A stretch of DNA of 64,000 nt from Botryllus schlosseri (Eukaryota), in NCBI GenBank assembly GCA_051294905.1, contig CM119381.1:15128001-15192000 (forward strand), written 5' to 3'. The stretch's first letter is position 1. Every line of letters starts with the position of its first letter. A model generated the notes under the pieces. It did not search any database and had not been told where the DNA came from. It worked only from the letters and a program-made list of their open reading frames with translations. A program made the position numbers and the translations under genes. Positions 1 through 19,859 of the stretch are shown here, one piece after another.

Positions 1-749
1 TTTTTCAAATCCCCATAAATTCTAAACCGCTGAATGGATTTCCGAAGAATAACTTTTGTTCAGTATGAAATATGTCTACGGTGCTTGGGAATTGCATTTA
101 ATGCTTATTTTGAAACACATGGTTATCTGCATTTGTGGATTTAGGCTGGAATTACCCATTGTGGACAACAGCTTGTGTGTGGTTTTTCAGTAACATTCAT
201 CCTCTATTCGTTTCTACATATCCTGATGCTACGTTTTATATTAGGTGATAAAACAGAGCGTTGTGAGGAATTAACCGATTTTGCGAATCCATCGGAAACC
301 TTTCTGCTGAAAAATGTCCGCCGATTTGGGAATTGCCTACGCAGCCAACGATGAAGCCATATGGCGCTAGAACATGATTTCCTTCTTATAACGGTGCTAT
401 ATATATTACAGTTGAAATTGTCATTTCAGGCACCAAACATGCTCACAGCGCAATTTCCGCAATATATTCAGTGCCAAACTGTAAAAAAGGGAATGAGTAA
501 GGCCTCGAGTTTGCCCACGGCTTGACTCGGAAAACGCTTGCTCAATCGCCGCATTTCGAGATCGACTCCAACCTCAGATCGTCATTGAATACCATAACCA
601 CAAAAGTGCAACTCGAAAGAGCGCCAAGTTCGACTCCAGTCGAACTCAAACTCGTTCTCTCGCTTCGCTTTCTGAATACCGATTCTTACGCAATGTTGAC
701 GCAAAATGCGTTTGAGCACTCAGTAAGGTTTCTTGAATACAGGCCACAA

Positions 750-1213
750 TGTTCTCCGAGGGCCGAATATACCGATTGAATTCGGCTATCGGTAAATTCG
801 GCCTCGTAAACATCGGCATATATATATACATATATATATTTATACGCATACCCTGTTCTCCAAATCACATGATAATAATATAATTATGAAATTAATTCAC
901 ATTAATAGTTGGTAATACATTTTTATAAAAAATTCTCCGAGGGCAGAATTGACCGAGTAACCAGTGAAGTGACTGGTGAATTCGGCCGTCGGTAAATTCG
1001 GCCCTCGTGAATATCCGCGCTATCTCCCGTGATTACGCGATCTACGCATACTCTGACATCCAAATCACTTAATAATAGTATAATTATGTAATTAATTCAT
1101 GTTAACGGTTGGTAATACATTTTAATACAATATTCTCGGTGGGCCGAATTTACTGATGTAATGGCCGAATTTGCCTGGGCCGAATTTACTTTGGGGCGAG
1201 TTTACTGGCAACC
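750..1213. repeat. About 190-bp degenerate tandem duplication rich in GGCCGAATT(T/G)AC motifs, probably one end of a non-autonomous DNA transposon
   Basis: The TTCTCCGAGGGCCGAAT...GGTAAATTCGGCC...TGGTAATACATTTT block recurs at about 752, 933 and 1133. It ends in GGGGCGAGTTTACTGGCAACC. No matching opposite TIR was found. Confidence 0.55.
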
Positions 1214-1217
1214 GCTG

Positions 1218-1300
1218 CGGATACCAATTTTCGAGTCTTTGGTATGACCTACCGCTCGAGAAGCCGGACGCATAACCATTACACTATCTCGCTCGCAACA
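1218..1300 (-). mobile_element. Fragment of a tRNA-derived SINE 5' end
   Basis: AGTCTTTGGTATGACCTACCGCTCGAG...CATAACCATTACACTATCTCGC reads as a reversed, internally deleted A-box/B-box SINE head. It resembles the head at 14801. Confidence 0.5.
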
Positions 1301-1363
1301 TGCAGGTTTGGATTAGTTACTGACTGTGCCTATCTATCATCTAATTGGTTTGATTGGTTAACT

Positions 1364-2498
1364 CAGGGGTGGGCAAACTGCGGCCCGCGAGAGTCTGAGG
1401 AAACCTATTGAAAATATTGATAAAATCGAATTAATGCAAGGACTTGACGTGAATAAACTTTTTCTTAGTGTATTTCACCATAATAATTGTAAGGCAGTGG
1501 TTCTCAAACTGGAGGGAGGGGGGCGTGAAAGCATCGGAAGGGGGCACGAAGCTGAGCTCGACTGAAAAATTTTTTTGCGCCCCGCGCGATTCAACTTCAG
1601 TTCATAATTTTTCCTCTGTATTTAGTCTCAATTTCATATTCAAAAATCAAATCATCCACAGTGGTAACCTTCCATGCCATCAAACTACCCGTTAAGTTTG
1701 CTAGCATCCTGGTTGCGTTTTGTGATATGACGATAAGGGGGCCGCGAAATCTTTCACCATCATAAGGAGGGGCGGGGTCGTGTCTTAAGAAGTTTAAGAA
1801 CCACTGTTCTAAGGTAAATACTTCCTATATTATTTTTTATGTTTTATTTCTTGCGCGGCAGCCCGATCTCAAGGCCCACGCAGTTTGAAACATCTGCTAA
1901 ACATCACAGAAATCCTAAACGAGATTGACATAATTCGATTCACGAGTGTGATGTCAGATTGGACACTCCAGTTCTAATTATTTCAATGATGTGCTTATAA
2001 AAAACGATTAGCGCGTGTCTTAGGTAGATTCGTTCTCTGTATGCGTAGAATTTGGGTATTTATATTGTATCTACATATAGTAGAAGCGTGTTTGAAGCTA
2101 ACACGGTTGTGATGCTGTCAGCATTGTATGTCCTGGAATTGAATCAAAAGTGGAATTAGTAAATCTATGAATAGATCGCTGCTCACAGATTTCAATTTCA
2201 ATCCTGTTCTAAGAATCGGGATAACCGAGTTTCATCTCTATAGTTTTGACAAATTGGTTATTGAGGTCGACCAGCCTATGAAATCTCGCCAGTCGCCACT
2301 ATGTTTCTGACGCGTGTACAATATCATCAAAGCAATGGTTTGTTTTAAATGAGCACATATATTATCTCCATGTCCTCACTATATAATCAAATACCACTAT
2401 TCGTTTTGGTTATAATCCCAATTTTATATATAGTGCGGCCCGCGAATGGATTCAGAATTTGAATGCGGCCCGCGAGCTCAAAAGTTTGCCCACCCCTG
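1364..2498. mobile_element. hAT (Buster/Charlie-type) MITE
   Basis: TIRs CAGGGGTGGGCAAACT / AGTTTGCCCACCCCTG. Perfect 8-bp TSD GGTTAACT at 1356-1363 and 2499-2506. Confidence 0.95.
1495..1806. mobile_element. hAT (Buster-type) MITE nested in 1364-2498; further copies at 16157-16421, 56155-56453 and a left half at about 41903-42140
   Basis: TIRs CAGTGGTTCTCAAACT / AGTTTAAGAACCACTG. TSD TTGTAAGG/TTCTAAGG (7/8). The copies share the internal CATAACCTTCCATGCCA...GCTAGCAT segment. Confidence 0.9.
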
Positions 2499-3099
2499 GG
2501 TTAACTTATAGATAAATTCACGATTGTAAGGTGGGGATAATTGGTTAATCCACTTGTTATAGACTAGTCCCAGGCTGGGATGCAGATAACTAGGGTGGGT
2601 AAACCGGTTAACCTTATAGTTATATGTGGCGTAGGTGTCAGTCGTCTGTACAAGAACCCCAGAGAAAGACCCAACCAAGGTCGAATACGAGGAAGAAAAT
2701 GAAAAGAGCGAGGAAGTATCAAAGCTCATAGGTCAATACCGAACACTGGTATATGGGACATCATAACTCGTAATATGCCCAGAATATACCGTGGTGGGTG
2801 TTGGACTGGTATTGGTAGACTCGGCTTGATTGTTTCTACGTCCTATTTGTTCCGTGTAAATTTCTTGAAATGAATTTGCCGTTCCGTCTGTTTCGGAATA
2901 CTATCACTATATCGCCAAGTTATGACAATTTCGATCATAAATGTCATGCCAACACCCCCAAAATACTTTTTTTTTACCATCATGTAAATTGTGAAGTACT
3001 ATGAAACCAAAACCACTTCAGGGAGTAGGCAAAACCTATACTTAAATAGGCCTACTGGTATTCTGAAAAAGTTGAAGTGTTTTGTTAATGAGTTGTCAC

Positions 3100-4004
3100 T
3101 AGGGCGATTTTTTTACCTAAAACGGAAGATTTTGACCTAAAACAAACTTGGTTTTGGCCTCACGTATTCAAATTAGGTGTTTTTGCACAAAATATTGAAA
3201 TTGTACTACTTTTTTCCTTTCTGGTTGGAACTGTCTGTCCTGACGAAGTAGTCTGGCCTGAAAAAACGTTTTTGACTTGAAAACTGACAATTTTTTACAT
3301 GAAGAACCTTGTATTTCGATGAAATCTGGCCCTATGAAGAATTCCAGTAGTTACATCACATATTATGATAGAAATAATTTAAATTTGCTGTAATACAGCG
3401 AAAGATGCTTTCCGACATTCTCGGTAGAAAGTGTCTGTCCATACTGTAGCTTGCCAAGAATGGAGAAAGAACGTTCAACAGCAGCAGTTATTGACTGACA
3501 ACACTGAAGTTGTGCTTACACTGCTGGTGAAACAGCGTGTTGCTTCATTCTGACAATGTTGTCTACATCACAATTTTTTATTGTGCGCTTCTTGATATGA
3601 GAACCATGCAATGCCCAAGCAGTCTTACTTCAGTTAGGATATTGCGGTACGTTGAGTCGTTGACCATAACACCATGTCAACCTATTTGTTTCATTTCACC
3701 GTTTGATTCACAACGAGCAGACAATGGGCAATCTACAACGGTAGGCCTATAAAGCAGGCTACAAGCTCTAAAATATCGAATGATAAGTAGGGGTGTTCTC
3801 AAATTGTACTGGCTACAAATTGTTAGGTTACCTAATTTAAGCCTATACACCAAATTCGGTTCAATTCCAGCCAGTAGCCACATTGCTACAGAAGTGCAAA
3901 ATCTATGATACAAACGAAATGCAGAGGTCAAAAAAATTTGACAAATTTTGACCTAACGCTACAATTTTGACAAAATCTTGACATGTCAAAAAAAAATCGC
4001 CCTA
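3100..4004 (-). mobile_element. Internally deleted hAT transposon carrying a remnant of the transposase C-terminal dimerization domain
   Basis: TIRs TAGGGCGATTTTTTT / AAAAAAATCGCCCTA. Degenerate TSD GTTGTCAC/GTTATGAC. The minus strand at about 3385-3510 translates to SITAAVERSFSILGKLQYGQTLSTENVGKHLSLYY, matching the hAT ERSFS motif. Confidence 0.8.
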
Positions 4005-4259
4005 GTTATGACCATATCTGGAAAATGGTGTAATGCTAAGGTAGCTACGGGACGTGCTAAATCAACACCTCAGTTACTTTTTATACTGCCCCTATTGCTC
4101 GGACCTTCGTTTTTTTCTGGCCCAGTTTCTCAAAATCGACCCCAAGGGGCAATATCCCCCAGCTAGAGAACCACTGGTAGACGAGGAGATTTGTGATCCC
4201 TGATTTGAGCCCGGAGAAGTTATTTTTAGAAATCGTGCTGTACTGCTAAGTTGGCCTCA

Positions 4260-7200
4260 ATGTGTATGTTAGGCTATACCGTTCCGGACTGGCACAGGTA
4301 CTGGACCTCATGTTGGTTTTTAGAGAATTGATGTCAGAACTATTTTGATTATAGACTAGAACATAATTTAGACTTCGATATTGAAGTACATCGTGAATTT
4401 GTATTAGAACACCCTAATTCCGGTCGTATCTCTGTCAATCATGTAATTATTCAAATCTCAGGGGTCATAGTGTGGATTACTAACCTATGCACCATGGCAC
4501 CCGAAGTTGGGCCTCTTATTTTCATATTCTAGCTACCTGGTTTTCAGTTACACCCAACTAGGTGAACGTGACGCTGTGCATCGCGGATTGGAAATGGCGC
4601 AGGATCAATTTGTAGATGTGGATAAGCTGTTGAGCACATACTTTTCAGAAGACGAGGATCGTTATTCGTCCGATTGGGATTTTAAGACGGTGATTACACG
4701 AAGTAAGATTAAGTAATCTAATTTTGGTTTGGAAATATTTGAGGAATGGTCCCGGCAACAAATTTTGCGGGCACATTCACTTTGTCATGAATTGAGGTGT
4801 GAACATGTGACGTTCGGGGTGTATGGCCCTTGAGGACCATATGCAGGCGCGTAGCCAGGGGGGTTTCGGGGGTCGGTACCCCCTCCTAGAAGCGTGAAAC
4901 CACCTTCTTGAACGCGAATCCCCATTCTTTTGAAATGACCCGTTCTGACGCTAATGGTCGGTTGCAATTCAATAAGTCGTATTATCAATTAACGAAAGGC
5001 GTGTTGCCAATTAGAGAGATTCGTCCGTGCGCGATGCACTGCACAAGTGCACAATGTAATGCGACACGAACATCCACTGAGATGATTGCGAAATTGGGTC
5101 ACGTGCTCGGCAATAGTTGCAGTCCTGATTAATCGCGTCTGCGACAAGCCTTAGTTCCGCTGGCTTGAATAATCTCATCTGCAATAGGCCCGGTGTGCAC
5201 TATATCATCGCTGACCTACACAATCGCATCTGCAAGCGGCCTAGTATACGAAAGATAACGCTAGCCTAACTACCGCGTCTCGGGCCTACCATGCTTTGGC
5301 TCCTATTTCCCAATGGCTCGGATAAAATGGTCGATAAGTATATGCTGATTAGCGATTGTGAGTAAAGAGTGACATCTCGAAACAGAGATGGAAGCGGGCC
5401 GGGTGAGCCGGACCCGAACCCGGCCCGAACCCGACAAGTTCAGCCCGAACCCGGCCCGAACCCGACGGTCGAGTTTTGAGCCCGTTTCGGCCCGAAACCA
5501 AGTTCAAATAGCAATTTTCAACTGTTGCGAGCAAATAAGCTGATATACGATTCAAATTTCGAGCTTTTCAACGCTTTCAATGCTCTCACTTTGTTTTCTT
5601 TCGATAGCAATCTTGCATATGGCAAGAGAACTTAATATATCTGAATGAGAATACGCTGCAAACAGCCCCTTAGTTCCACCATCCTTTTTGCAAATTATGT
5701 GAACTGTATTAAATGGTTCAATATTAAACTAAATTAAAGAAATAAAGGAATGAAATTGGCCAAGATCAGAAAAAATAGTGTGTTCAAAATACAAGTCAAC
5801 TGTCATCCATACAAAGGGCGTTGCATTCACACGGTATACGAAGAATTGATTATTTCAATAGCCTCAACAGTTACTGGATACAGTCGGGTTCGTCTCTCAA
5901 TTTGTAAATGGGTAATGTATTGCATCTTATCAATTCGTTCTCAATCAATTCTCTATTCTCTATTTTGGCTGGTGACTATCAACGTAGTTTACCAGTTCTA
6001 CGTATATGTGAGCGATACAGCGCCTTCTTGCGTGTATATTCAACTCTATATCCGTTTAGCGGTTCAGAATCAGGGACCACTCAATATGTATTTCAGACAG
6101 CTAGCAAAATGCAATGATGCAATCATGCCTCATACTTCGAAATGGCAACTTGACTTGAATTGTGACTTGACTCGTGACTTGACTTGACTTGACTCGACTT
6201 GACTCGAGTCACCTCCAAAAATCGAGTGACTTGACTTGACTCGAGTCAGCTTTGAAAATCGATTGACTTGACTTGACTCGAGTCAAAATGCGCAATGACT
6301 CGAAATGACTCGTGACTCGAAGGTAGTGACTTGATCCCAACACTGCTATATAACAATACTACCGCTGTCACATAGCCTAATACAATATAAGTTAGTTTCG
6401 GTATAGACCTAAAGCAATTCACCATGGACGACAAAATCACTATGGCGCATCTAAAAGCTTTCTTTAATAAATATTAACACCGCCGTAACACATCTATCGA
6501 TCAATTCTGCTGTGCCACAACGGAAGCCGTCGTGTCATCACCTGCTTCTAGCTGTTCAGTTCAGCAATCAGCATGCCTCATCGAAATTAAAACTAAATTG
6601 GTAGTAATCCAGGCTCCAGCATGGTAATCCATCCATCCGTAAGTCATGTTTTCGTCACAATGTGGCCTGATTGCATGAACAATGATCAATGTCTGGCGTA
6701 TTTGGGACACTTGTTTACTATTTAGCTGACATTGTTTCATTATTCAATCATAGTCTTCGGGCCGTCTTATAATGAAGTTTATCTGGGTTCGTACTTCGTA
6801 TAAAATTTATTCACAGATATTGCCATACTTATACGTGATAAGGTATTGGTGTATCTTATATGTAGTTGTGCCACATTCGAACAAAATTGCAAATCAAATT
6901 TGTATATGAAGTCAATGCTTTTCGTAGTGACTATTCGGCCCGATTCAATCCCGATAATTTTTATAACTTTGGGCCCGAACCCGGCCCGAACCCGAAAAGC
7001 CCGGCCCGACTTCCATCTCTGTCTCGAAACTGAATTACATCGAATGTGCGCAAACATATGCGACGCGTCCGTACGTACTCGTACATGCGTAATTGATTTC
7101 CGCTAATACTTGAACATAGCCATCAAAAGCTGTGTGTCAAGGCTAAAAAGAGGTAAGGTTTGAACCACCTGAAATTGGCGTCATTATAGCCCGTATTCGA

Positions 7201-10200
7201 TAAAAACTGGTACATTTTGACTTGCTCAAATCGTCGCAGAGGCTATGTAAGACGCATTGCTAAGCGCGCGTATTTAATTGTTTGACGCATTGGTTGGCCT
7301 TCCTACACAATCGCATCTGCAATAAGTGTAGTGGTCATAGGCGCCGAACCTGGGCATGCAAGGCATGCCAGGCATGCCTAGACATTTTTTTAGGCATGCG
7401 GCATGCCTAGAATTCGGTTCGGCATGAATCGGCATAATCCCCGATTGTGTTATTTAGAACGAATCGCAATGTATTTCCGTTTACGACATTACCTGCTACC
7501 GCTTATGTGAGCGAGGTAACCCATTGCGCGCGGCCAATTAGCTACAAGCGCGTTGCCAATTAACGAGATATGTCTGTGCACAATGTAACGCGACACGATC
7601 TCCCGCTGAGATGATCGCGAAATTGTGTCATTGATTGCCGTGCGTTCGGCAATCATCGCTTGGGACGCTTGCCTGCTTTATCGCGTCTCCTACAAGCCTA
7701 GTTTCACTCGCTTGAGCATGATGAACAATCACATCAGCAGTAGGCCCGGTGCCATCGCTGCCTGCACATTCGCATCTGCATTGGCGCACACGATATTATC
7801 GCTTGCCTACACAATCGCATCTGCAACAGGCCTGGTACGAAAGATATCATCGCTGGCTAACTATCGCGTCTAGAGCCGAGCATGCGTTGGCTCCCATCTC
7901 TCGAGCCTAGCATGCGCTAGCTCCAATCTTTCGATGGCTTGGTGACAATGCCGTTAGGTGTTTGTTGGTTAGCGATTGTAATTAAAGAGCGACATCGCTA
8001 ACCTGAATGACATCGAATGTCCGCAGACATGTGCGATTGTGAGTGCGCCGTGCATGCGTAAGTGAATCCCGCTAATACCTAAACATAACCATCAGAAGAT
8101 GTGTGTCAACTGTCAAGGCTTGAGTTGTAAAAGACGGGAAAGGTTTGAATAACCTGAAATCGGCGCCATTATAGAACAGATTCCATAACAACTCTGACAT
8201 TTTGCCTTGCGCTAATCGTCGCCGAGGTTACGTGAAACGCGTTGATAAGCGGCGTATTTAATTGTTCGCTAGCGATCAGGGACTCGCTAATTGACAGCAC
8301 TTCCGGACTCGTTGACAAGCTTATCATACGCGTGAGTTGGTTAACACGCAGATATTGCATAATCGGCATTTATGCAGGCACTTAACCCTCATGAATTGAT
8401 GCTATATTATCCCTAATTATCAATTCCGTCGGATCATGACGTCATTCCTTTGTGACGTCATCGAACTCGCATGCCTAAGGAAAATTAGCGTTCGGCGCCT
8501 ATGGTAGTGGTAGCTCTATGGCGCCACTAGGGTGTGACGACATCGCAGGTGCTTCGGTGCTTGGTCGTCACTGAATACATGGCTGCTTGAGAACTCACGT
8601 CTCGTATATTAGACAGACCGTCAGTCACGTTACTACATGGTGGCAACAGTGTAAAAGCAGCTGATAGCAATTACTTAGCTACTCAGAATTATGGCTAGTG
8701 GATATACTGCCTTGCAAGGACTGCACCCGAAGCCATTATCACTGGCTGGAACCAACCCGCCTCAAGCGTGGGTTGATTGGAAGGAAGACTTTGAAACGTA
8801 TCTCTGTGCTGCAGAATTATCACAAAAGGATGACTGCGTCAAGGTAGGACACCTCCTGAGTCTTATTGGTCCGGAGGGAAAGTCAATTTACAAAAATCTC
8901 ACGTGGCTTCCTGCTCGACGAGAAAATGATCAAGACATTCCTGCTGAGGATAAAAATGACTACAAGCTAGTCATTGAGAAATTTGATGCGTGCTTTGAGC
9001 TTCGTGATGATCGCTTCAGAATGCGAAGGAAGTTTTGGCTATTCTTGAAACGGGAGGAGGACGAGTCTTTTTTGCAATGGTCACTCCGTGTTCGCGAAGC
9101 TGCAGCCAAGTGCTGCTATCATCCGCAGAGGTGTCTTGAGGAAGTTATTATGGATAAACTCCTTCTGTGTTGTACGGACACCGGTACCTTGTCAGAACTC
9201 TTCGCCGAGGATCCGAAAACCTTGACACTGAGCAAAGTTGAATCGATCATCGATAAACGCGAATACGTCAAACAGGATCTACTGCTCGACAGAAGGATGG
9301 AAAGGATGCCAAGACGTCGCTGATAAAATGCAAATACTGTGGTAAGAAGCACCAGTTTGGTAGATTTTTCTGTCCTGCTGCCGATTACAATTGCTCGGTG
9401 TGTGAGAAAACAGGACATTTCGAAACTGTCTGCCGTGCTTCTGCTCGGACAAATATACGCTCCGTGGAATCCGATACGGTTGGTGAAGACGATACGGTTG
9501 GTGAAGACGGTTGGATGAAATTCGCTCAGAGCTCCAGAAAGATGACGTATTGCGCACAGTGATGCAATATGTATCCTCAGGGTGGCTGAAATGCAAAGAG
9601 ACGCTGTCACGCTGCATGGCCCACTTAGGCCATACTGGAACGATAGAGCCTGTTTATCTACTTATGAAGGACTCCTGCTTAAAGGGAATCGCTTGGTGAT
9701 CCCCTGTACGCTGAGACAAGACGTTTTAAGATACCTTCATGATGCTCACCAAGGGGTGACAAAATCCCGACTCAATGCATCACAGTCATGCTGGTGGCCT
9801 GGAATTTCTAAGGACATTGAAGAAACCGTCAGAAATTGCGAAAAGTGCACGGAGCATCAGCGAGAAAAGGTTGAACCGATGCTGTCAGCATCCTTCCCAG
9901 AGAGACCCTGGTCCCGTGTTGGTGCCGACTTCTTTCAATACCAGAATTCCATGTACCTGCTAGCCGTTGACTACTACTCCAGGGATATTGAGATTTGCAT
10001 AGTCTCCAAAACAGTGAACGCAGCAGAGACGATTCTGAAATTCAAGAAGATTTTCAGTAGGCATGGCATCTGCGAGACTTTGGTCACCGATGGAGCACCT
10101 ATGTTCTCTTCCCGCGACTTTGCGTCATTTTGCGAAAGCTGGAAAATTGAACATATCATGTCCTCACCTAGATATCCACAGGGGAACTCGGAGGCTGAGC

Positions 10201-13200
10201 GTGCCGTTCAGACCATCAAAAACCTTCTGCGAAAATGTGACGATGAATATCTGGCGCTACTCACATACCGCAACACGCCATTGGCTATCGGCTACTCGCC
10301 GGCAGAATTGAGCATGGGCCGCAAACTAAGAACAAGAGTACCGTGTCATCCAGACGATCTTCTGCCCAAGTCTGTCGACCGAACCGCCGTGAAGAAAGCT
10401 GAAGCAGATTACCGACGCAGAATTACTCGTGATTACAACAAAAGACACAGAGTAGTACCTGGAGATGAGTTCAAGGTGGGAGATCGCGTCTGGATTCCGG
10501 ACTGCAAATCGCAAGGTGTTGTGGAAAAACTTGACACTGACACTCAACCCAGATCCTTGGTTATCAGAACTGGGCGTGGCACCTTCAGAAGAAATCGCCG
10601 AATGGTGCGGAGATACCAGACGGAGAATGCCCCGCAAGAAGGCGTCGACATTACCGCCAGTGAGGCAGCTGAATTCTTCAAATTTCCCGATCAGGGAGGA
10701 GATAGCAGTTCGAGCGCTACTAGTGTCGATCGTGATGACCATCATGAGGCGGCGATAGTCCGACGGTCGGATCGGAACAGAACCGCACCTCGCAGATACA
10801 TCGAGGAGTACTGATGTAGTTATAGGAGTAGTGTGTGTAAATATGTTGTGTTCTTCATTCACCTCTTGCCTGCCAATTGCTTCATACCTTTGTACCGCTA
10901 ACTGCCTCAATTCGGATTGTTTATTGTCTTCATTCTGTGCTTGCGTTGTATATGTTTGTGCTGCTTATAAGCATTTGTGCTTGTCCCGAGAAGGGAGATG
11001 TAGTGGTAGCTCTATGGCGCCACTAGGGTGTGACGACATCGCAGGTGCTTCGGTGCTTGGTCGTCACTGAATACATGGCTGCTTGAGAACTCACGTCTCG
11101 TATATTAGACAGACCGTCAGTCACGTTACTACAATAAGCCTGATACGAAAGATATATCAATAGATCATCGCTAGCCCTAGCCTAACTATCCCGTCTCGGG
11201 CCTAGCATGGTTTGGCTCCTATCTCTTGATGGCTTGGAGACCATGCCGTTGATTGTATGCTGATTAGCGATTGTGATTAAAGAGTGACATCGCGAAACTG
11301 AAAGACATCGAATGTGCGCATTTGCGCAAACATGTGCGACGCGTGCGTAATATATTTCCGCTAATACTTGAACATAACCACCGGAATGTGTGTATCAACT
11401 TGAGTTATAAAAGAGGACAGGTTTGAAGCACCTGAAATCGGCGTCATTATGGCACTTATTCCCTAAAAACTCGGACATTTCGACTAGCGCAAATAGTCAA
11501 CGAGGCTGCGTAATACGTGTTGATGAGCGCGCGTATTTAATTGTTCGACGCGTTGATGAGCGCGCGTATTTAATTGTTCGACGCTGTGATAAGCGCAGGT
11601 ATTTAATTGCTGACGACAGATCAGGGAGTCGCTAATTAACAGCACTTCCGGACTCGTCGACAAGCTTATCAAACGCGTATAATCGCGAACACGAGGAGAT
11701 TGTATAATGTATGATCGTCATTTACTTAACCCTAATGAATTGACGCTATATTAGTAAATTCACAAATCATCGGAACCCCGCCCTTATATTTTAAAATCCC
11801 TTCCTTATTTTTCGGCTGTCTACGCCCCTGACCATATGGGTAATTCATAGACGCCGGGTAATCCTGAGTGACCACCACAACTTCAAACACATAGGTGATG
11901 TTCATAATATTACCCGCATCGCAAATTTAACCCAAATAATGTTATCCTAATTAAATATGTTTTTCTTAATCGCCGACGGCTAGCACTTTTCTCTTTCAAA
12001 TTCGCCTACTTTCGCTACAGAGGCCATTGAAGCCGTGCACTAATTTTCAGAGACGCTTCGTTACCGAGAGGAGTTTGGTGAATCTGATGATGAGGATTTT
12101 TCCTCGGATGATTCATTATTCGCATTCGATTCTGATGCTTTGGAATTCTTTGCATCTGAAGACGACGAACCTTCTATAGATAGTATTCCTGAGACTACCG
12201 AAGGTTAGTATATTATGATGATTTGGTAGTAAAAGGTATCACAGAGAGAGAGAGAGAGAGAGCAGAGGGTACCGGATCAGTGCTCGGCACTGCTTAGTGC
12301 GCCTCACAATGGCTTAGCTGATTCTCATCCTGCCACAACTTTACCCATTTACCAGTAGCCAACAGGCACCGCTCGTCAGCAGCTGAGTAGTTGGGAGACC
12401 ACCAGTACAAATAATGTAGTCTAACACCTCTGGTTTACGAGACCAGAGGTGTTGCCACTGGGTTGTGGAAGCTGTCAGTAAAATATCATTAGATCTATAA
12501 ATTTATATTCAGGTACTTCTAAGCCTGAAGAGTCGCAGACTGTTGTGTGGACGAAGCCATCCGATGTTCCAAAAAAAAATTAATGAAATTCACTGGCACA
12601 CCTGCCGTAAAGAACAGGATGTTGGGTAAAAATCTGTCAGAACTTGGATGCTTTCTTGAGTTTTTTTTCCGAAGAAGCTATTAAGCTGATGGTTGAAATG
12701 ACAAACAAAAAGTATCACCACGACGAAAAAAATCGGAAGAAGCCAGAAAATAGCCAGACCGAGCAGGAATCTATGTCTTCATGGAGTGACATAACAGTGC
12801 CAGAGATGAAAGCCTTCATTGCGATTTTGATTCATATGGGACTGCCAACAATTGATCGGTTCTGGACCAAACCAATGTTTAGACCTGACAACCTAAAGAG
12901 AATCATGAGTTGCGATAGATTTATGCTAATCTTTCAGCACCTTCATTTTTCCGACTTGAAGCCAGATAATCACCAAGAGGAAGAGGACAGCTCTTCATCC
13001 AAGGCACACCAAACTGATAAGTTAGGTAAAGTTCGGAAGATTTCGGAAATAATTCGCAGCAATTGTGTCCGTAAATATAGTCCTGGAAGAAACTTGGCAA
13101 TTGACGAGTCGATGATGACACACCGCAAACACACACGCGGTAGGCACTTTGTATCATCTACTGCGACAGAACCTAGCTTTGGAATTAAGGTCTGGGTCCT

Positions 13201-14101
13201 TGCCGAGTCTTCGACATCGTATGTATCGAATTTTCAATTATACATTGGAAACGATCCGATAGATATAGACTGTGACAAAGAGTATGGTCTGCCTGGTGCA
13301 ATTGTCTTGCATCTAATGAAGCCTTTTCTCAACGAGGGGAGGCATCTCTACATGGACTACTTCTACACCAGTCCATCGTTGTTGGAAGAATTGCAGAGAA
13401 ACGGAACCTATGCGTGTGGACATATGAGAAAATATGACAAGTGTTTCCCGAAAGAATTCCAAACGATTAAAGCTTCAGTAAACAAGACCAGCGATGAACA
13501 CTGTCTCATGTCCGAAGAAGGAATTGTCTGTTTTCCGTGGCATGATGGTGAGCCCATATGCTTTCTGTCTACAATCCATATGCCAGCGGCGAAACAGTCT
13601 TCCGGGACTGAAACTGCCACGAGCACCGAAGGAAAAGCGGATCCTCCAGTGATAAAGGACTTTAACCGGTACATGAATCATGTTAATTTCACTTCGGATA
13701 TAAGGAAATATTTCAATTCTGCAAGGACTTCCCCCGTCTTATATCGAAAAGTGTTCGGCTACCTCCTGGAAGTGTGCATTCATAACGCTCAGATTGTGTA
13801 TGAGCACCTTAAAGGGGAAGAGGTTTACCCGGGAGACTTTCGCCAAAAACTTGCGATCAGCTTAGTCGGAACGCACCGGACGCTGGGCACACGGTTTGAC
13901 TCCAGTGAAAGGCATTTCCCGACTCGCAAGGAAAAAATGGGAAATTGTATGTATTGCACTGAAAGGGCAGAAGATGCCTATGAGAAAGATGGCACCGTCC
14001 TGACCGTCCACCAGTCAAACGTATCTTGCACCGGATGTAATGTATATCTGTGCCTGAATGACGAACGTCCAAGTCCGTGTTTTGCCCAGTATCATGAGTA
14101 A
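4260..14101 (+). CDS. Spliced piggyBac-transposase-derived gene (PGBD-like, DDE_Tnp_1_7 plus C-terminal Cys-rich domain). Exons: 4260-4297 (tentative), 4548-4702, 12051-12203, 12513-14101. Two compensating homopolymer frameshifts in the last exon.
   Basis: ORF 12644-14101 has piggyBac motifs NLAIDESM, FGIKVWVLAES, LYMDYFYTS and C-terminal CMYC...CTGCNVYLC...CFAQYH. Upstream acidic exons have canonical AG/GT sites and matching phases (2, 1, 1). TAA at 12581 lies between an A9 run (12571-12579) and a T8 run (12661-12668). Confidence is high for the transposase ORF and lower for the upstream exons. Confidence 0.8.
5383..7021. mobile_element. Ac/Ds-like hAT non-autonomous element
   Basis: TIRs CAGAGATGGAAG / CTTCCATCTCTG, similar to the maize Ac TIR CAGGGATGAAA. 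Subterminal CCCGAACCCG arrays at both ends. Perfect TSD TCTCGAAA at 5375-5382 and 7022-7029. Confidence 0.95.
5850..6345. mobile_element. Right half of the GACTT-array TIR element (full copy at 17377-18337)
   Basis: Collinear with about 17840-18337. Ends in GTGACTTGATCCCAACACTG after (GACTT)n/GACTCGAGTC arrays. Confidence 0.85.
7336..8503. mobile_element. hAT-type MITE inserted into the 5' LTR
   Basis: Perfect 14-bp TIR CATAGGCGCCGAAC / GTTCGGCGCCTATG. Perfect 8-bp TSD GTAGTGGT (7328-7335, 8504-8511) made of LTR sequence. GCATGCC subterminal repeats. Confidence 0.95.
8691..9510 (+). pseudogene. Gypsy gag, frameshifted before its CCHC zinc knuckles
   Basis: ORF 8691-9323 is gag-like (WVDWKEDFETYL, FLQWSLRVREAAAKC). 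An alternative frame at about 9325-9440 reads CKYCGKKHQFGRFFCPAADYNCSVCEKTGHFETVCR. Confidence 0.85.
9591..10814 (+). CDS. Gypsy integrase (HHCC zinc-binding domain plus DDE core), open frame
   Basis: LHDAHQG...CEKC, then RVGADFF, LVTDGAPMF and GNSEAERAVQT. First in-frame ATG at 9591 follows an apparent 1-nt deletion in the GWP motif (GGGTGGCTGAA). Confidence 0.9.
   Translation: MQRDAVTLHGPLRPYWNDRACLSTYEGLLLKGNRLVIPCTLRQDVLRYLHDAHQGVTKSRLNASQSCWWPGISKDIEETVRNCEKCTEHQREKVEPMLSASFPERPWSRVGADFFQYQNSMYLLAVDYYSRDIEICIVSKTVNAAETILKFKKIFSRHGICETLVTDGAPMFSSRDFASFCESWKIEHIMSSPRYPQGNSEAERAVQTIKNLLRKCDDEYLALLTYRNTPLAIGYSPAELSMGRKLRTRVPCHPDDLLPKSVDRTAVKKAEADYRRRITRDYNKRHRVVPGDEFKVGDRVWIPDCKSQGVVEKLDTDTQPRSLVIRTGRGTFRRNRRMVRRYQTENAPQEGVDITASEAAEFFKFPDQGGDSSSSATSVDRDDHHEAAIVRRSDRNRTAPRRYIEEY
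10999..11133 (+). repeat. 3' LTR (135 bp)
   Basis: TGTAGT...ACTACA terminal inverted repeat; matches 8504-8637 plus the split first bases at 7327. Confidence 0.95.
12242..12263. repeat. (AG)n microsatellite in an intron of the PGBD-like gene
   Basis: CAGAGAGAGAGAGAGAGAGAG seen directly. Confidence 0.9.
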
Positions 14102-14449
14102 AAGGCATTTTGTTTGGCCAGACTGAATTTGTGATGTTTCGTGCAGTGGGATGGTTGTTTCTATTTGAAGTGTTCTGCTCTGTGCATTTTCTGTAACTGT
14201 TGCCTTTTTATGTTGCGGCTCAAAGCTATTTTTTACTTGTTAGTTCAACTGTGACTTTTTTCCAGTTGGCGATGCTTTTTTTTGCTTTATCCACTGCCAT
14301 TTTTTGAAAAATCGCCACTTTGTAATGTATTTGCACAAATAACACGATGCTTGATTTAAGAGGTTTTCTGTGTTGAATTAGCAAGCATGGCGACTCTAGT
14401 AAAATACAGGTGGAGAAAGAAAACGATTTCGATATGCGCGTGTGCCTGG

Positions 14450-15420
14450 CGAAACCCCGTCATTTTGAAATGACCGTTCCAACTGTTAACTCAAATATTC
14501 AGTTGCAATTCAATCATTGTGCTGTCTGTGTTCCACGCCGCCGATTTGCGAGAAGCATGTTGTTAATTTGCAGGAAGAGTCTGTGATGTCTCCCGCTGAG
14601 ATGGTCGCGAAATTAGGTAATTCATTGCCGTACGCGTGGCAATCGTCGCTGGCTTGAACAATCGCATCTGCAATAGGCCCGCAGTTCACACTATATCATC
14701 GCTTGCTCGCGCAATCGCATCTACATTGGCGGCTTCGGCCTGGTGTGCATGATATCATCGCTGGCCTACACAATAGTATCTGCAATAGGCCTGGTGCGAA
14801 GGTGGCGAGATAGCGCAGTGGTATAATCCACGGCTGCAACACCAATGGGTTGCGGGTTCTCGCTCGACCGAGGTCCACTTCAGAATTCCTATCTAAGTGT
14901 TGAAGCTTGAAGGTTTATCTGGGCTCCTCCTCGCCACCTCAACCGCGTAAAAGCGGTGTCTTACAAAGAGCCTAGAAGTGGGACGTACACATATGGAATA
15001 AAAAATACAGAAAATCGGTCTGGTGTAAATGACCGTTGTAGTCGACAAACACCGTGAATACCCTAAACATACAAGGCCCGGTGCGAAAGATATCATTGCT
15101 GGCCTAGAACTATCGCGTCTCGGGCCTGGCATGCTTTGGTTCCTATCTCTCGCTGGTTTGGAGACAAAGCGGTCGAGTTCCAGCTGATTAGTGATTGTTT
15201 TATGTCATATTAATTAAAAAGCAACATCGCGAAACTGAATAACATCGAATCGCTGGGAATTGGGAACAGACTTCAACATGCGTAATTGATTTCCGCTAAT
15301 ATTTGAACGTATCGATCAGGTGTATCATGGCTTGACTTCTAAAAGCCGACAAAGGTCTGAACCACCTGAAAGCGGTGTCATCAGGTTCGGACATTTCGAT
15401 TTGCGAACACTGTGTGTTGG
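14450..15420 (+). repeat. Copy of the dispersed 'core' repeat with about 45-bp tandem units, interrupted by a SINE
   Basis: GCCTACACAAT(C/A)G(C/T)ATCTGCAATAGGCC units and flanking blocks are shared with about 4990-5374 + 7030-7326 + 11134-11750, 7540-8410 and 52720-55110. Confidence 0.85.
14801..15073 (+). mobile_element. tRNA-derived SINE
   Basis: A-box-like GGCGAGATAGCGCAGTGGTA and B-box-like GGGTTGCGGGTTCTCGCTC, about 270 bp long. 14-bp direct repeat AGGCCTGGTGCGAA/AGGCCCGGTGCGAA at 14787-14800 and 15074-15087. Confidence 0.8.
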
Positions 15421-15821
15421 CTTGTGCCTGCAAATTGGAATTCATTTCCGGGCATATTCATTTCTCTAACAGTGACATAATTCGGTAAATGCAGCAATAC
15501 AGCGATATAATGAGCAAACAATTGTCGCGACGAAAGATACGGTGTCAGCATAGTGTCCTATAGTGTCAGACTCAGCACCCATTCGTGGCGATACTGATTA
15601 GAATACACGCTTTCTCGTTTGGCATCATCCAAATTTCATGTTGTCTGCTTGATACATTCGTACTCCGAAATTGTCGCACAATGTCATTCTTCAGTGATCC
15701 TTTCGTTATTTACGTGCAGTAGGTCATGCCATGCCATTGTCAAAGATTGATGCATCTCCAGATTCAGGGTGACACAAATTCTGAATTTATTCGATTCGTT
15801 TGAACATGGAACCTTCTATAG

Positions 15822-16742
15822 CAGTGGTTCCCAACCTGTGGTACGCGAAGGTCTTCCAGGTGGTACGCGAGTAGATTCTGCTTTTTTTCGACCGAATCTC
15901 ATTAGTTAAGGTGGTGTTGAACTCAAAGATTGATTGTTCTCCAATAAACTTCAGGCTTAGCGTGGCCTCCTCGTAATCGACTCTAACGTCTCACGCTATT
16001 CCCCAGCTGCTAATTTTCCCTTCTACGTGGGAGTTCGAGCAAGGATTTTCATCTCTGATAACTATCAAGTCGAAGAAACGAAACCGACTTGTTGCGCCCA
16101 TGCATGACTTTCGATGCGCTGTGAGCAAACATATGCCACGCATCGACCAGCTAGTGCATTGGTTCTCAAACTGGGGGGGGGGGGGCGCGAAGCTACGACC
16201 AACTGGAAAATTTTTTCGCGCTTCACACGATTTGCTCTGTGTATAGTCCTAATTGCATATTTAAGAATCATCTTATCAACTGTCATAACCTTCCATGCCA
16301 TAAAGTTATTCGTTGGGATTGCTAGCATTCTGGTCGCATTTTGTGATCTGACGGTAAGGGGGGCGCGAAATTTTTCACCATCATAAACGGCGGCATGTCT
16401 AAAAAAGTTTGAGAACCGCTGGGCTAGTGGAAAATAAGCAAATGCAGCCATCGCATTAACACAATTGACGTTTGTTGTTTGCTGTTATTTCAGTATCATG
16501 CTGTTCTTCTTGTGACTGGTGGTCAAAAAACAATTTCATGCATCCCATTAACCCTGGCTGATAATACCTAGTGTAATGGTATTTGCTAATACGCCTCGCA
16601 TACGTCAAATGCGTCATTATGACGTCATAAACGATGGAAACATTTTTACCTCCTTCAGCGCGCGTAACTTATGTAGGTGGTACGCGAGCACTGCATAAAA
16701 CCTCGAAATGGTACGTGGGTGAATAAAGGTTGGGAACCACTG
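15822..16742. mobile_element. hAT (Buster-type) MITE with a second MITE nested at 16157-16421
   Basis: TIRs CAGTGGTTCCCAACCT / AGGTTGGGAACCACTG with perfect TSD TTCTATAG. The nested copy has TSD AGCTAGTG/GGCTAGTG. Confidence 0.95.
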
Positions 16743-17376
16743 TTCTATAGGCTATTCCGTAAAACTTGATTGCTGGACGTACTCGACAGTCGACACTCGT
16801 ATCGAGAACAACGATATCAAATATTCTGAACAATCGCAACCACGCAAGGGTCATTGTTTTGGTCAATTGTGCCGCGTCGCTGCGATTGTTTGGAACAATG
16901 CAGATTTTCAGACTTTGAGGTGTATTTCAATGGGGTTCCATTGCCTTAGTGATTACATTTTATTGTATATTTTCGGCGACAGTAGCTTTCAAATAAGATC
17001 AACTTTATTGAATTTAAGCACGCTATGGGATTAGCAATTATGTTGCGTTCAGATTGCTGAGCAGTAATTTCCTCCGAGCAAGCAAGCGTGACGACGGGCG
17101 TTGCGTATCTATCCGTAGGCTAGTTATCTATAGTTACTCACACGGCACTTTGCGCTTGAGGGCTATTCCCAACACAGACAACCGATGTTCACACCACTAC
17201 CTCTTCATATCTGAAATTTGGTACACGCACAGATTAGCTCATTCCAAACAGGATGAACTTTACTTTATGAAAATTGGACTTCGGGGTGAAAATTTACGTC
17301 ACTTCGAAAATTGACGATTTTCTGCTCATTTTGGGTCTGCATATTTCAGGTTTTATCAATGAAATATTCAAGGTGT

Positions 17377-18337
17377 CGGTGTTGGGATGACTCGAGACAT
17401 GACTTGACTCGAGTCAGACTCGAGTCACTTTTTCGTATGACTTGACTTGACTCGTGTCACTTTGCTAAAATGACTTGACTTGACTCGGCGTATCAGGAGT
17501 GTGGATTGACTCGTGACTCGGAGCAAAATTCACGAGTCAATTTCAAGTCATCAAGTAATCGGTGTCTATATAAATGTCTGCATCTTACATATGTTCGGAT
17601 TGTTCGCGCAACGCTGGTGTAACCCGTGAGAGCGACCAATCATTCAATGATCGTGCGTTTTACTGACCCTCCATTGTTCTTTCACAAATATATTGATCGC
17701 AAACGAAGCGATCGAAGCTGACAGCCTACGTTGTCGTAAACTATAGTATAGTAAAGTGATTTAATCGCAAAATCTCTATTTCTGATCTGTGTTGTTACCT
17801 TAACCAGACCTCTTGTTTTATTAAAATTGAATCCGAAAATAGTTTATATAGTCCTCAACCATTGGCGCAGGCTCGAATCGTATCATATCAATTTGCAAAA
17901 GGGTAATGTATTGCATCTTATCAATTCGTTTCTCTGTTCTCTATTTTGGCTGGTAACTATAATCTGAGGCTGTGCAATACTTACGTAGTTTATTAGTTCT
18001 ACTTATATGTGAGCCATACAGCGCCTTACTTGCGTGTATATTTAACTCTATATTCGTTCATCGGTTCAAAATCAATGACCACTCAATCTGTATTTCAGAC
18101 AGCTAGCAAAATACAATGACGTAATCACGCCTCATACCTCGAAAAGGCAATTTGACTTGAATTGTGACTTGACTCGTGACTTGACTTCACTTGACTCGAC
18201 TTGACTCGAGTCACCTCCGAAAATCGACTGACTTGACTTGACTCGAGTCACCTTCGAAAATCGTTTGACTTGACTTGACTCGAGTCAAAATGTGCAATGA
18301 CTCGTGACTCGAAGGTAGTGACTTGATCCCAACACTG
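17377..18337. mobile_element. TIR element with GACTT/GACTCGAGTC subterminal arrays (probably hAT)
   Basis: Ends CGGTGTTGGGAT / ATCCCAACACTG. Only 5 bp (GGTGT) of flanking duplication is evident. Confidence 0.8.
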
Positions 18338-18667
18338 GGTGTAGCTAGATGTTGGACTACAGTTTAGATACGCCACTTGGATTTATCTGAAGCTTGTCTG
18401 ATCGTCGATATTTCCAAGTGAAATTTAATGCCCTGTAGGTTAGGGTCCAAGGTTAAATTGAGGGGAAGTTTGATCAATGGTCAGGCGTTACACAATTTGG
18501 ACCGCGGATTGCTCAAAAACATCTAAAAATATTTCGGAAAATAGGATCTTAAATGAAAGTTTGCTTCAAGGAGACTTCGTTCATAGCTGTTTGATTTTGG
18601 TTTTGAGACTGTAAAGCGATGAGAGTTTCAAGAGCACACTTCATTTGTACATGGAAATGCAGTAGAA

Positions 18668-19000
18668 GGGTGTGTTCGGACATCAAGTCTGGGGTGGGTG
18701 CGGACATCATGTCTGGGGTGTGTTCAGACATCATGTCTTGGGTGTGTTCGGACTGTGTTGCCATTCTGACATCGTGTCTGGGGTGAGTTCGGACTGTTCT
18801 TCCCCTCGGACATCGTGTCTGGGGTGTCTTCGGACATCATGTCTTGGGTGCGTTCGGACAGTTTTGCAACCAAGACATCGGGCCTAGGGTGTGTTGGGAA
18901 TGTGTTGCCATTCGGACATCGTGTCTAAGGCGTGTTCGGACATCATGTCTGGGGTGTGTTAGGACTGTGTTGCCACTCGGTCATCGTGTCTGGGATATGT
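18668..19000. repeat. Degenerate 24-bp minisatellite (GTTCGGACATCATGTCTGGGGTGT)n
   Basis: About a dozen degenerate units. They produce the SEHTPDMM-repeat ORF on the minus strand. Confidence 0.9.
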
Positions 19001-19859
19001 TTGTGCTGCACCAGACATGGCTCAGGCCTGATATCTGCGCACTATTTTTATCCAGACATGCTCCGGAGCGGATACCTGCGCACTAAATACCCCCAGGCAT
19101 GGTCCGAACCGAATATCTGCGCGCTTAATGGACACAGACATGCGTCAGACGTGATACCCGCGTGCCGCGTCCTAAACGACGCGTGACCTGTATGACCTAT
19201 ATGTCTGCGGTTTTTGCTGTTATCTGGGTATGGTATACTCATCGCGCACCGTATTCGATACAACTTTTCCGTATTGCTCTTCGACTAAACTACGGGCCTT
19301 ATGATATGGGGAGGGTGCTATGGCTTGACATTTTCTGAAACGACGTGTTCGAGTAAACGAAGGATTAGTATTACATCACATCTTCATATCAATACCATCA
19401 TTTGCATCCCATGATGCGGACGAATGCTTATTATGCTGTCGAAAATTGATACCTCCTGGGATGCATCAATATATATCAAGCTCTCGTACGCCTTCCGCAT
19501 ACCTCAATTTGCAGCGTTTGACAGTCCATACGAACGAACTACGACCGTTTTCACAGCTACTTACTTGAGTAGATTTAAAGTCAGTCAATTCTACTTCTAC
19601 TTCAAGCAATCTTAGGATCTTTTTAAAAGTACTGGTTCTACTCGTACTTCAGTCAATTTTAGCTTCACTACTTCTACTTGAGTAGCTTTCTTGACTACTT
19701 TGACCACCTCTGGATATTACCAACAAGTAGTTAGGGCACGGGGCAGTCTATATATAAGGTGATATGCATCAGGAATTGCGATTTACGGTAATAAATATAA
19801 AAATACCGGCTGACAGTTTAACCGCAGTTAGAGCTCCAAATATAACAAACAGCTCTTAC

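What the first reader, a model, noticed from the sequence alone, without database searches (positions are those of the whole stretch)
4260..14101. Candidate domesticated, intron-containing piggyBac gene with a substituted catalytic Asp
Seen: the 485-aa ORF is only the last exon. Two, possibly three, upstream acidic exons (4548-4702, 12051-12203, tentatively 4260-4297) splice in phase to it across a 7.3-kb intron filled with TEs. I found no TTAA-flanked TIR pair. The first two catalytic positions are kept (IDE, MDY), but the usual YNxxMGGVD motif reads FNRYMNHVN, so the third Asp is Asn. The C-terminal Cys-rich domain is intact. Known: active piggyBac transposases need the DDD triad, and PGBD genes have been domesticated repeatedly; PGBD5 has introns and PGBD3 is used as a spliced 3' exon. 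Inference: this is a lineage-specific co-opted gene of about 640 aa, probably DNA- or chromatin-binding rather than a transposase.
Basis: partly seen in the sequence, partly recalled or inferred. Interest (0 to 1): 0.75.

Follow-up and report, generated by a model that had tools for sequence, protein, structure and literature searches.

The report
Spliced piggyBac-derived gene in sea squirt
A sea-squirt gene that descends from a piggyBac "jumping gene" enzyme has lost its mobile ends and one catalytic residue, yet is still transcribed, spliced as predicted and kept under constraint, so it is a probable new case of a host-retained transposase, which is a known kind of event.

Summary
ORF 12644-14101 is a near-complete piggyBac transposase domain (Pfam E 1.4e-67). 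Transcript contigs from three independent studies confirm both predicted junctions exactly (4702/12051 and 12203/12513). The third catalytic Asp is Asn, all Cys/His ligands of the C-terminal domain align, there is no TTAA/TIR pair, and the gene is single copy in the 495-Mb genome.

- The window sequence has two 1-nt indels (A9 run 12571-79, T8 run 12661-68). They put three in-frame stops between the acceptor and the ORF. All three transcriptomes lack them and read one open 616-codon frame.
- Intron 2 is not a sign of domestication. The same phase-1 intron occurs in a related copy that keeps a piggyBac-type end and in a seven-gene TIR-less tandem cluster on another chromosome, so it is ancestral to the family.
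- The family still includes TTAA-flanked elements.

Polymorphism (15 synonymous : 17 non-synonymous, pN/pS about 0.3) indicates constraint. No orthologue or synteny test was possible.

Verdict: probably a lineage-specific domesticated, catalytically impaired piggyBac-derived gene (about 0.6). The main rival is a transcribed relic in decay. The scan holds other piggyBac notes in this genome, none on this gene elsewhere. It is a new member of a known kind.

The parts
4260..4297 (+). It is in phase with 4548 but remains untested.
   Evidence: Sequence only. The X11 contig carries 199 nt upstream of 12051, which is 44 nt more than exon 4548-4702. The origin of those 44 nt was not shown.
4548..4702 (+). 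Upstream coding exon. The likely ancestral start codon is ATG at 4594 (MAQDQFVDVDKLL..., an acidic N-terminus like that of related elements).
   Evidence: The 30-nt loose end before 12051 in X3 equals 4673-4702 exactly and uniquely; X11's differs by one base. Donor GTAAGA lies at 4703.
4703..12050 (+). Intron 1 (7,348 nt), filled with nested repeats. These include a Gypsy-type element with an integrase ORF at 9582-10814 and identical 134-nt direct repeats at 8504-8637 and 11000-11133.
   Evidence: The ends are GT..AG.
12051..12203 (+). Acidic exon 2. It ends ...IPETTE+G in phase 1.
   Evidence: Covered by transcript contigs in X3, X9 and X11. X11 shows an in-frame GGG insertion allele behind 12127.
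12204..12512 (+). Intron 2 (309 nt, GT..AG, phase 1, 12 codons before the conserved Trp). It is ancestral to the family.
   Evidence: The joint is skipped in X3 and X9; X11 shows a 1-nt variant of it. An intron at the same place and phase occurs in L005 and the chromosome-2 paralogues.
12513..14101 (+). Last coding exon: the piggyBac transposase domain plus the Cys-rich domain, with the stop codon at 14099-14101.
12571..12579 (+). A9 run. The window is 1 nt shorter than all transcript alleles (+G behind 12571, or +T behind 12579). This causes stops at 12581 and 12584.
12661..12668 (+). T8 run. Transcripts of X3, X9 and X11 have T7. Here the window returns to the frame of the main ORF.
13103..13105 (+). 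First catalytic Asp (AIDESM), retained.
13355..13357 (+). Second catalytic Asp (LYMDYF), retained.
13685..13687 (+). Third catalytic position: Asn (AAT) where relatives have Asp (or Glu in the C2b paralogues). The neighbouring fourth Asp position is Ser (13694-96).
   Evidence: No variant is listed at this codon in three covered transcriptomes.
13946..14098 (+). C-terminal Cys-rich domain (C-x2-C ... C-x2-C-x3-C ... C-x4-H). All ligands are present, with a 2-aa insertion before the last Cys.
   Evidence: There is no Pfam zf-Tnp_2 hit.
14102..14357 (+). 3' untranslated region, at least as far as transcript contigs reach.
   Evidence: The X9 contig covers 13908-14357 and X11 reaches 14214.

Best explanation
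This is a single-copy, immobile gene derived from a piggyBac-like transposon of a family that is still present in this sea-squirt genome. It is transcribed from at least three exons (4548-4702, 12051-12203, 12513-14101+UTR). In most sampled individuals it encodes a 616-aa protein counted from ATG 4594. That protein keeps the acidic N-terminus, the transposase core and the Cys-rich DNA-binding domain. It has Asn at the third catalytic Asp, Ser at the fourth Asp position, and a degraded strand after the first Asp.

Shown here: origin, immobility, expression, splicing, loss of the catalytic residue, and a within-species excess of synonymous changes.

Inferred: the protein no longer cuts DNA and is retained for a non-catalytic role that uses its DNA-binding and oligomerisation surfaces. 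The most plausible roles are binding piggyBac-type ends or other sites as a regulator, or pairing with catalytically intact relatives as an inactive partner or inhibitor.
For: - Pfam DDE_Tnp_1_7 at E 1.4e-67; piggyBat 9c0f at E 1.3e-31 with D, D, N at the triad.
- Single copy at protein level (next best 48% identity) and at DNA level.
- No TIR pair, while the same scan recovers the TIR pair of paralogue L011; L006's was found by the repeat search.
- Exact splicing in contigs of three studies, with one open frame.
- 15 synonymous versus 17 non-synonymous variants against a site ratio of 1:3.9 (pN/pS about 0.29).
- An in-frame 3-nt indel allele.
- The gene forms a 100%-supported clade with ten paralogues of its own genome and P0009, yet is only 40-45% identical to those ten paralogues and has the longest branch (1.28). 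It has therefore had a long separate history without losing its frame.
- Immobile relatives in a TIR-less tandem cluster evolve at dN/dS 0.19-0.36, which shows that this family does give rise to retained host genes.
Against: - The assembled haplotype has two frameshifting indels that truncate the full-length frame. If real, a null or N-truncated allele segregates.
- The window protein has lost 10 of 40 columns that are invariant in 17 relatives, the most of any member. This fits relaxed constraint as well as new function.
- No orthologue from another species was found: the best outside hit is 44% identical and belongs to another paralogue line. Long-term conservation is therefore untested.
- The polymorphism sample is small, comes from assembled contigs, and 15 further variant rows were not shown.
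- Purifying selection between paralogues also occurs in mobile lineages (L005/L006 dN/dS 0.15).
Confidence: 0.6

Rival explanations
1. Transcribed relic. This would be an old piggyBac copy that lost its ends and a catalytic Asp, is still driven by a promoter and spliced through its ancestral introns, has no host function and is on its way to becoming a pseudogene.
For: - The reference haplotype is already frameshifted twice.
- It has the longest branch and the most losses at invariant sites in the family.
- Intron 2 is inherited from the transposon, so splicing needs no host adaptation.
- No cross-species conservation has been shown.
Against: - The synonymous excess in polymorphism.
- Open 616-codon frames in three other studies, despite 55-60% amino-acid divergence from every paralogue and no sister copy in the genome.
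- The two indels sit in homopolymer runs and could be assembly errors.
Confidence: 0.27
2. Still an enzyme. The protein would cut or join DNA using other acidic residues, as claimed for human PGBD5, and would act in trans on piggyBac-type ends or host sites.
For: - Two of the three Asp residues and the whole fold are retained.
- An Asp lies four residues after the Asn (NFTSD).
- TIR-bearing relatives exist as possible substrates.
- The literature reports activity of PGBD5 without the canonical triad (PMC4625184 abstract).
Against: - According to PMC5381638, the four Asp positions are strictly conserved in putatively active elements.
- Both the third and fourth positions are replaced here, and the strand after D1 (FKGRxxFRQ) is unrecognisable.
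Confidence: 0.06
3. Not one gene. The upstream exons would belong to another transcript, and the join would be an artefact of contig assembly.
For: Logan contigs are assemblies, and raw RNA reads (X24) were too sparse to show the joints.
Against: - The same joints appear in contigs of three separate studies.
- They have canonical GT..AG ends and correct phase.
- They give a continuous piggyBac-like N-terminus homologous to that of L005/L006.
Confidence: 0.03

Closest known systems
Vertebrate piggyBac-derived genes PGBD1-PGBD5 (especially PGBD5 and the CSB-PGBD3 fusion)
   Same: It is a transposase-derived, TIR-less, single-copy gene that is transcribed, with the catalytic triad not conserved. 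It contains introns, like PGBD5. Ka/Ks in the known groups is 0.12-0.43 (PMC5381638), similar to the pN/pS of about 0.3 found here.
   Different: - It is not an orthologue. Its nearest kin are piggyBac-like elements of its own genome and Styela clava proteins that NCBI names 'PGBD4-like'.
- PGBD5 was reported absent from urochordates (PMC3902484).
- The intron is inherited from the transposon rather than gained.
- No host exons are fused.
- Conservation across species has not been shown.
Ciliate PiggyMac with its catalytically inactive PiggyMac-like partners (PiggyMac per PMC3902484; the PgmL partner roles are from my own knowledge)
   Same: One genome holds a family of piggyBac-derived genes that mixes members with an intact triad (L002, L003) with members that have altered catalytic sites (window D to N; L007-L010 D to E).
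   Different: There is no evidence of programmed DNA elimination in ascidians, no evidence that these proteins interact, and the two families are unrelated lineages.
Autonomous piggyBac-like elements of the same genome (L006 on C4, L011 on C6)
   Same: They share the protein family (40-41% identity), the same domain order and the same N-terminal acidic region. The close L006 relative L005 has the same intron site.
   Different: Those elements have TTAA-flanked terminal inverted repeats and a full DDD triad. The window gene has neither.
Truncated or inactive transposase repressors (such as the P-element KP type; from my own knowledge)
   Same: A catalytically dead relative that keeps its DNA-binding and multimerisation parts could poison or compete with the active transposase.
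   Different: This is purely an analogy. Nothing here tests repression.

Membership tests
piggyBac transposase superfamily (protein) | DDE_Tnp_1_7 / RNase-H-like transposase core | tested here: met
   Pfam E 1.4e-67 over profile positions 4-348 of 349. phmmer to piggyBat 9c0f gives 1.3e-31 and to T. ni 6x67 gives 2.8e-11.
Autonomous piggyBac-like element (PBLE) | Catalytic DDD triad | tested here: not met
   D, D, N at codons 13103, 13355 and 13685. The fourth Asp position is Ser.
Autonomous piggyBac-like element (PBLE) | Terminal inverted repeats flanked by a TTAA duplication | tested here: not met
   No pair was found in 1-20000 at 10 or more matches of 13. There is no GGTTAA in 14100-17500. 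The lone TTAACCC at 11927 has no inverted partner. As a positive control, the same script recovers the L011 ends.
Autonomous piggyBac-like element (PBLE) | Several similar copies in the genome | tested here: not met
   Only self at DNA level. The next protein match is 48% identical.
piggyBac transposase superfamily (protein) | C-terminal Cys-rich (PHD-like) domain | tested here: inconclusive
   All six Cys and the His align with 16 relatives, but Pfam PF13842 gives no hit at E<=1.
Domesticated piggyBac-derived gene (PGBD type) | Immobile single locus derived from a transposase | tested here: met
Domesticated piggyBac-derived gene (PGBD type) | Expressed as mRNA with an intact reading frame | tested here: met
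   Spliced contigs in X3, X9 and X11 carry a continuous frame. Caveat: the assembled allele is frameshifted.
Domesticated piggyBac-derived gene (PGBD type) | Purifying selection on the immobile copy | tested here: inconclusive
   The within-species ratio of 15 synonymous to 17 non-synonymous variants gives pN/pS about 0.29, with p between 7e-4 and 0.018. The sample is small and contig-based, and dS to paralogues is saturated.
Domesticated piggyBac-derived gene (PGBD type) | Orthologues kept at the syntenic locus in other species | not testable with these tools
   No tunicate genome collection is available. The protein databases hold no hit above 44% identity.
PGBD5 orthologue | Closest kin are PGBD5 genes | tested here: not met
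   The gene nests within a 100%-supported clade with ten paralogues of its own genome and P0009. The nearest named outside relatives are Styela 'PGBD4-like' proteins. No PGBD5 sequence was included in the tree.

The most novel reading that the evidence does not exclude
The sea squirt keeps a whole set of immobilised piggyBac-derived genes: a seven-gene TIR-less tandem cluster with both DDD and altered members, plus this dispersed DDN gene. These could work together as a host DNA-cutting or DNA-marking system, with inactive members as obligatory partners, as in ciliate PiggyMac/PiggyMac-like complexes. Such a system could, for example, serve somatic genome rearrangement or control of the still-mobile relatives.
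Probability: 0.06. Interest if true: 0.85.

Novelty: new member of a known kind. Interest (0 to 1): 0.45.

Why it matters
Published surveys (PMC3902484, PMC5381638) found only intronless piggyBac ORFs or fragments and mobile piggyBac-like elements in urochordates. They placed the only intron-bearing chordate piggyBac gene (PGBD5) outside the tunicates.

Here a tunicate has an expressed, spliced, immobile piggyBac-derived gene with a dead catalytic site, plus a tandem cluster of further immobile paralogues. These sit in the same genome as their still TIR-bearing cousins. That puts several stages side by side: a mobile element with an intron, a mobile element that lost the intron, immobile genes with the triad, and immobile genes without it. 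Such a series is a convenient natural system for studying how transposases are captured.

It also gives a caution. An intron in a transposase gene is not in itself a mark of domestication.

Tried and rejected
- Word-indexed protein search gave only distant hits (29% identity or less).
- The exhaustive search gave no orthologue. The best hit, P0009 (44%), belongs with paralogue L004, and its contig DNA could not be fetched.
- BLAST of the acidic exons against the chromosome-2 cluster found nothing (my exon-1 query there was also mis-framed). The upstream exons were found instead by an acidic-ORF scan.
- The TTAACCC at 11927, 124 nt before exon 2, was considered as a relic left end. It was rejected because it has no inverted partner and the motif occurs at chance frequency.
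- An alternative acceptor at 12640 or 12618 was considered as a way to bypass the stops. It was rejected because transcripts use 12513.
- Raw RNA run X24 gave only 50 mostly partial reads. It shows neither the joints nor the indel state reliably.
- The loose-end sequences at 12790 (X24) and 14132 (X3) were not found in the window.
- Pfam did not recognise the Cys-rich domain.
- Structure prediction and complex prediction were not run. The fold is not in doubt, and no binding claim is made.
- I did not verify the species. The genome size (495.5 Mb) matches a published haplotype-resolved Botryllus schlosseri assembly (496 Mb, PMC12448946), but this is only a lead.
Full report
**What is there.** The window is G000:C11:15128001-15192000 of a 495.5-Mb genome. 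An earlier follow-up in this scan calls the organism a sea squirt. ORF 12644-14101(+) matches Pfam DDE_Tnp_1_7 over almost the whole profile (E 1.4e-67). It aligns to the solved piggyBat (9c0f, E 1.3e-31) and T. ni piggyBac (6x67) transposases.

In that alignment, and in a family alignment, the catalytic positions read as follows:
- The first Asp (AIDESM, codon 13103-05) and the second Asp (YMDYF, 13355-57) are kept.
- The third position is Asn (AAT, 13685-87).
- The neighbouring fourth Asp position is Ser.
- The conserved strand after the first Asp (FKGRxxFRQFxPxKR) is unrecognisable.

The six Cys and one His of the C-terminal domain all align with relatives. Pfam's zf-Tnp_2 model does not score it, however.

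**Gene structure, tested with transcripts.** I laid four runs on 11850-14450. Contigs from three separate studies (X3, X9, X11) lack 12204-12512; X11's joint differs by 1 nt.

In X3 and X11 the contig continues upstream of 12051 with 30 letters. The X3 letters equal window 4673-4702 exactly and occur nowhere else in the window; the X11 letters differ by one base. Junction 4702/12051 is therefore confirmed too, across a 7,348-nt intron. That intron holds a Gypsy-type integrase ORF (Integrase_H2C2 plus rve) and many repeats, including identical 134-nt direct repeats.

The tentative exon 4260-4297 could not be tested. The X11 contig has 44 nt beyond exon 4548-4702, but their identity was not shown. 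The peptide that starts at ATG 4594 resembles the N-terminus of related elements, so I take it as the ancestral start. That gives 109+153+1586 nt, or 616 codons.

In the window sequence, the frame entered at 12513 runs into TAA 12581, TGA 12584 and TAA 12608. The conserved segment KLMKFTGTPAVKNRMLGKNLSE..., homologous to paralogues, lies in another frame.

All three transcript assemblies differ from the window at two homopolymer runs:
- One extra base at the A9 run (+G behind 12571 in X3, X9 and part of X11; +T behind 12579 in another X11 allele).
- One T fewer in the T8 run at 12661-68.

Together these changes give one continuous frame. I could not settle whether the window state is an assembly error or a real allele. 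Two points favour a real allele. Run X1 (possibly the source sample) holds 100% of the sampled words. On the other side, both sites are slippage-prone homopolymer runs. X24 raw reads were too few to decide.

**Mobility.**
- The gene is single copy. The next best protein match in the genome is 48% identical.
- At DNA level only one 67% patch, to a paralogue, is found.
- No inverted repeat brackets the gene.
- No TTAA-flanked pair reaches 10 of 13 matches in 1-20000, and no GGTTAA exists in 14100-17500.
- The one TTAACCC at 11927 has no partner.

**Family context.** Ten intact paralogues exist at 40-45% identity to the window gene. With P0009 they form a 100%-supported clade. The nearest named outside relatives are Styela clava proteins that NCBI names PGBD4-like. 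The window gene has by far the longest branch (1.28).

Two members are bona fide elements:
- L006 is flanked by TTAA and imperfect TIRs that begin CCCTAC/CCCTTT.
- L011 is flanked by TTAA plus CCGAATGGCACCG-type TIRs.
- L005, 80% identical to L006, keeps one such end.

Seven further members lie in an 85-kb tandem array on contig C2 (37.98-38.07 Mb) without any TIR pair. They evolve at dN/dS 0.19-0.36. Four of them (L007-L010) have Glu at the third Asp and a degraded post-D1 strand.

**The intron is ancestral.** L005 has a 62-nt GTAAGT...CAG intron in phase 1, 12 codons before the conserved Trp. This is exactly the place and phase of window intron 2. Its close relative L006 lacks it precisely. 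The C2 genes show a good phase-1 acceptor at the head of their open frames, 14-19 codons before the Trp. L007, L009 and L010 also show upstream acidic exons ending PET..G|GT, matching the window's PETTE-G|GT. The intron therefore came with the transposon lineage and is not evidence of host capture.

**Selection.** Variants between the window and the transcript contigs fall as 15 synonymous and 17 non-synonymous. The site ratio is 299:1156, so pN/pS is about 0.29. The non-synonymous changes cluster in the acidic exon and a low-complexity linker. An in-frame GGG insertion allele exists in exon 2. No variant is listed at the Asn codon.

Against strong constraint, the window protein has lost 10 of 40 columns that are invariant in 17 relatives, more than any other member. 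Comparison between species was impossible. Neither protein search found an orthologue, and no tunicate genome collection is available.

**Reading.** The most likely reading (about 0.6) is that this is a lineage-specific, immobile, catalytically impaired piggyBac-derived gene retained by selection. Its probable action is non-catalytic DNA binding or partnering through the retained Cys-rich and core domains. That last step is inference.

The main rival (about 0.27) is a transcribed relic in decay, for which the frameshifted reference allele is the best argument. Residual catalysis with other residues (about 0.06) cannot be excluded from sequence.

**Comparison with known work.** Domesticated piggyBac genes are well known: PGBD1-5, Kobuta, and the ciliate PiggyMac and TPB genes. 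The published surveys found only intronless ORFs or fragments and mobile elements in urochordates. I found no paper describing piggyBac-derived host genes in ascidians. This is a new member of a known kind, of moderate interest. The more unusual observation is the TIR-less tandem cluster of paralogues found in passing.

Noticed in passing
G000:C2:37982855-38066086 (loci L002-L004, L007-L010, L013-L022): There is a tandem array of seven intact piggyBac-derived genes (three on +, four on -) in about 85 kb, with no TTAA/TIR pairs. Each shows an intron acceptor at the same place as the window gene. Pairwise dN/dS is 0.19-0.36. Four of them have Glu at the third catalytic Asp and a degraded post-D1 strand. 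This is a candidate domesticated multigene locus.
   Followed up: partly
L023:3165-6420 (G000:C4) versus L024:5740-5960 (G000:C14): Two old copies (80% aa identity) of one piggyBac-type family differ by the precise presence or absence of a 62-nt phase-1 intron. The intronless copy has TTAA-flanked TIRs and a 702-aa ORF. This looks like a clean intron loss (or gain) inside a DNA transposon.
   Followed up: partly
window 14132-14450: An X3 contig of much higher depth (about 260, against 80 for the piggyBac transcript) covers this stretch just past the stop codon. At 14132 it diverges into letters that are not in the window. It is an unidentified abundant transcript, or a variant, overlapping the 3' UTR.
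   Followed up: partly
window 11850-11980 (contig extends about 126 nt further left): An X3 contig (depth 36) covers the 3' part of intron 1 and ends 70 nt before exon 2. It may be repeat-derived transcription or an alternative 5' exon.
   Followed up: no
window 12790: Four raw RNA reads of X24 match from 12790 onward. Before that point they carry about 104 nt unlike the window and not found anywhere in it. Most X24 reads fit only in part, perhaps because the strain or clade is divergent.
   Followed up: partly
window 8504-11133: Identical 134-nt direct repeats at 8504-8637 and 11000-11133 bracket a 210-aa ORF without a Pfam hit and an integrase ORF (H2C2 plus rve), with no reverse transcriptase ORF seen. 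This is a recent insertion inside intron 1.
   Followed up: no
G000:C11:15102343-15102821 (-), about 25 kb before the window: DC_STAMP-domain exons lie here.
   Followed up: partly
window 46429-46821 (+): This ORF has a weak DHC_N1 (dynein heavy chain N-terminal) match. It fits the dynein gene reported just beyond the window's end.
   Followed up: no
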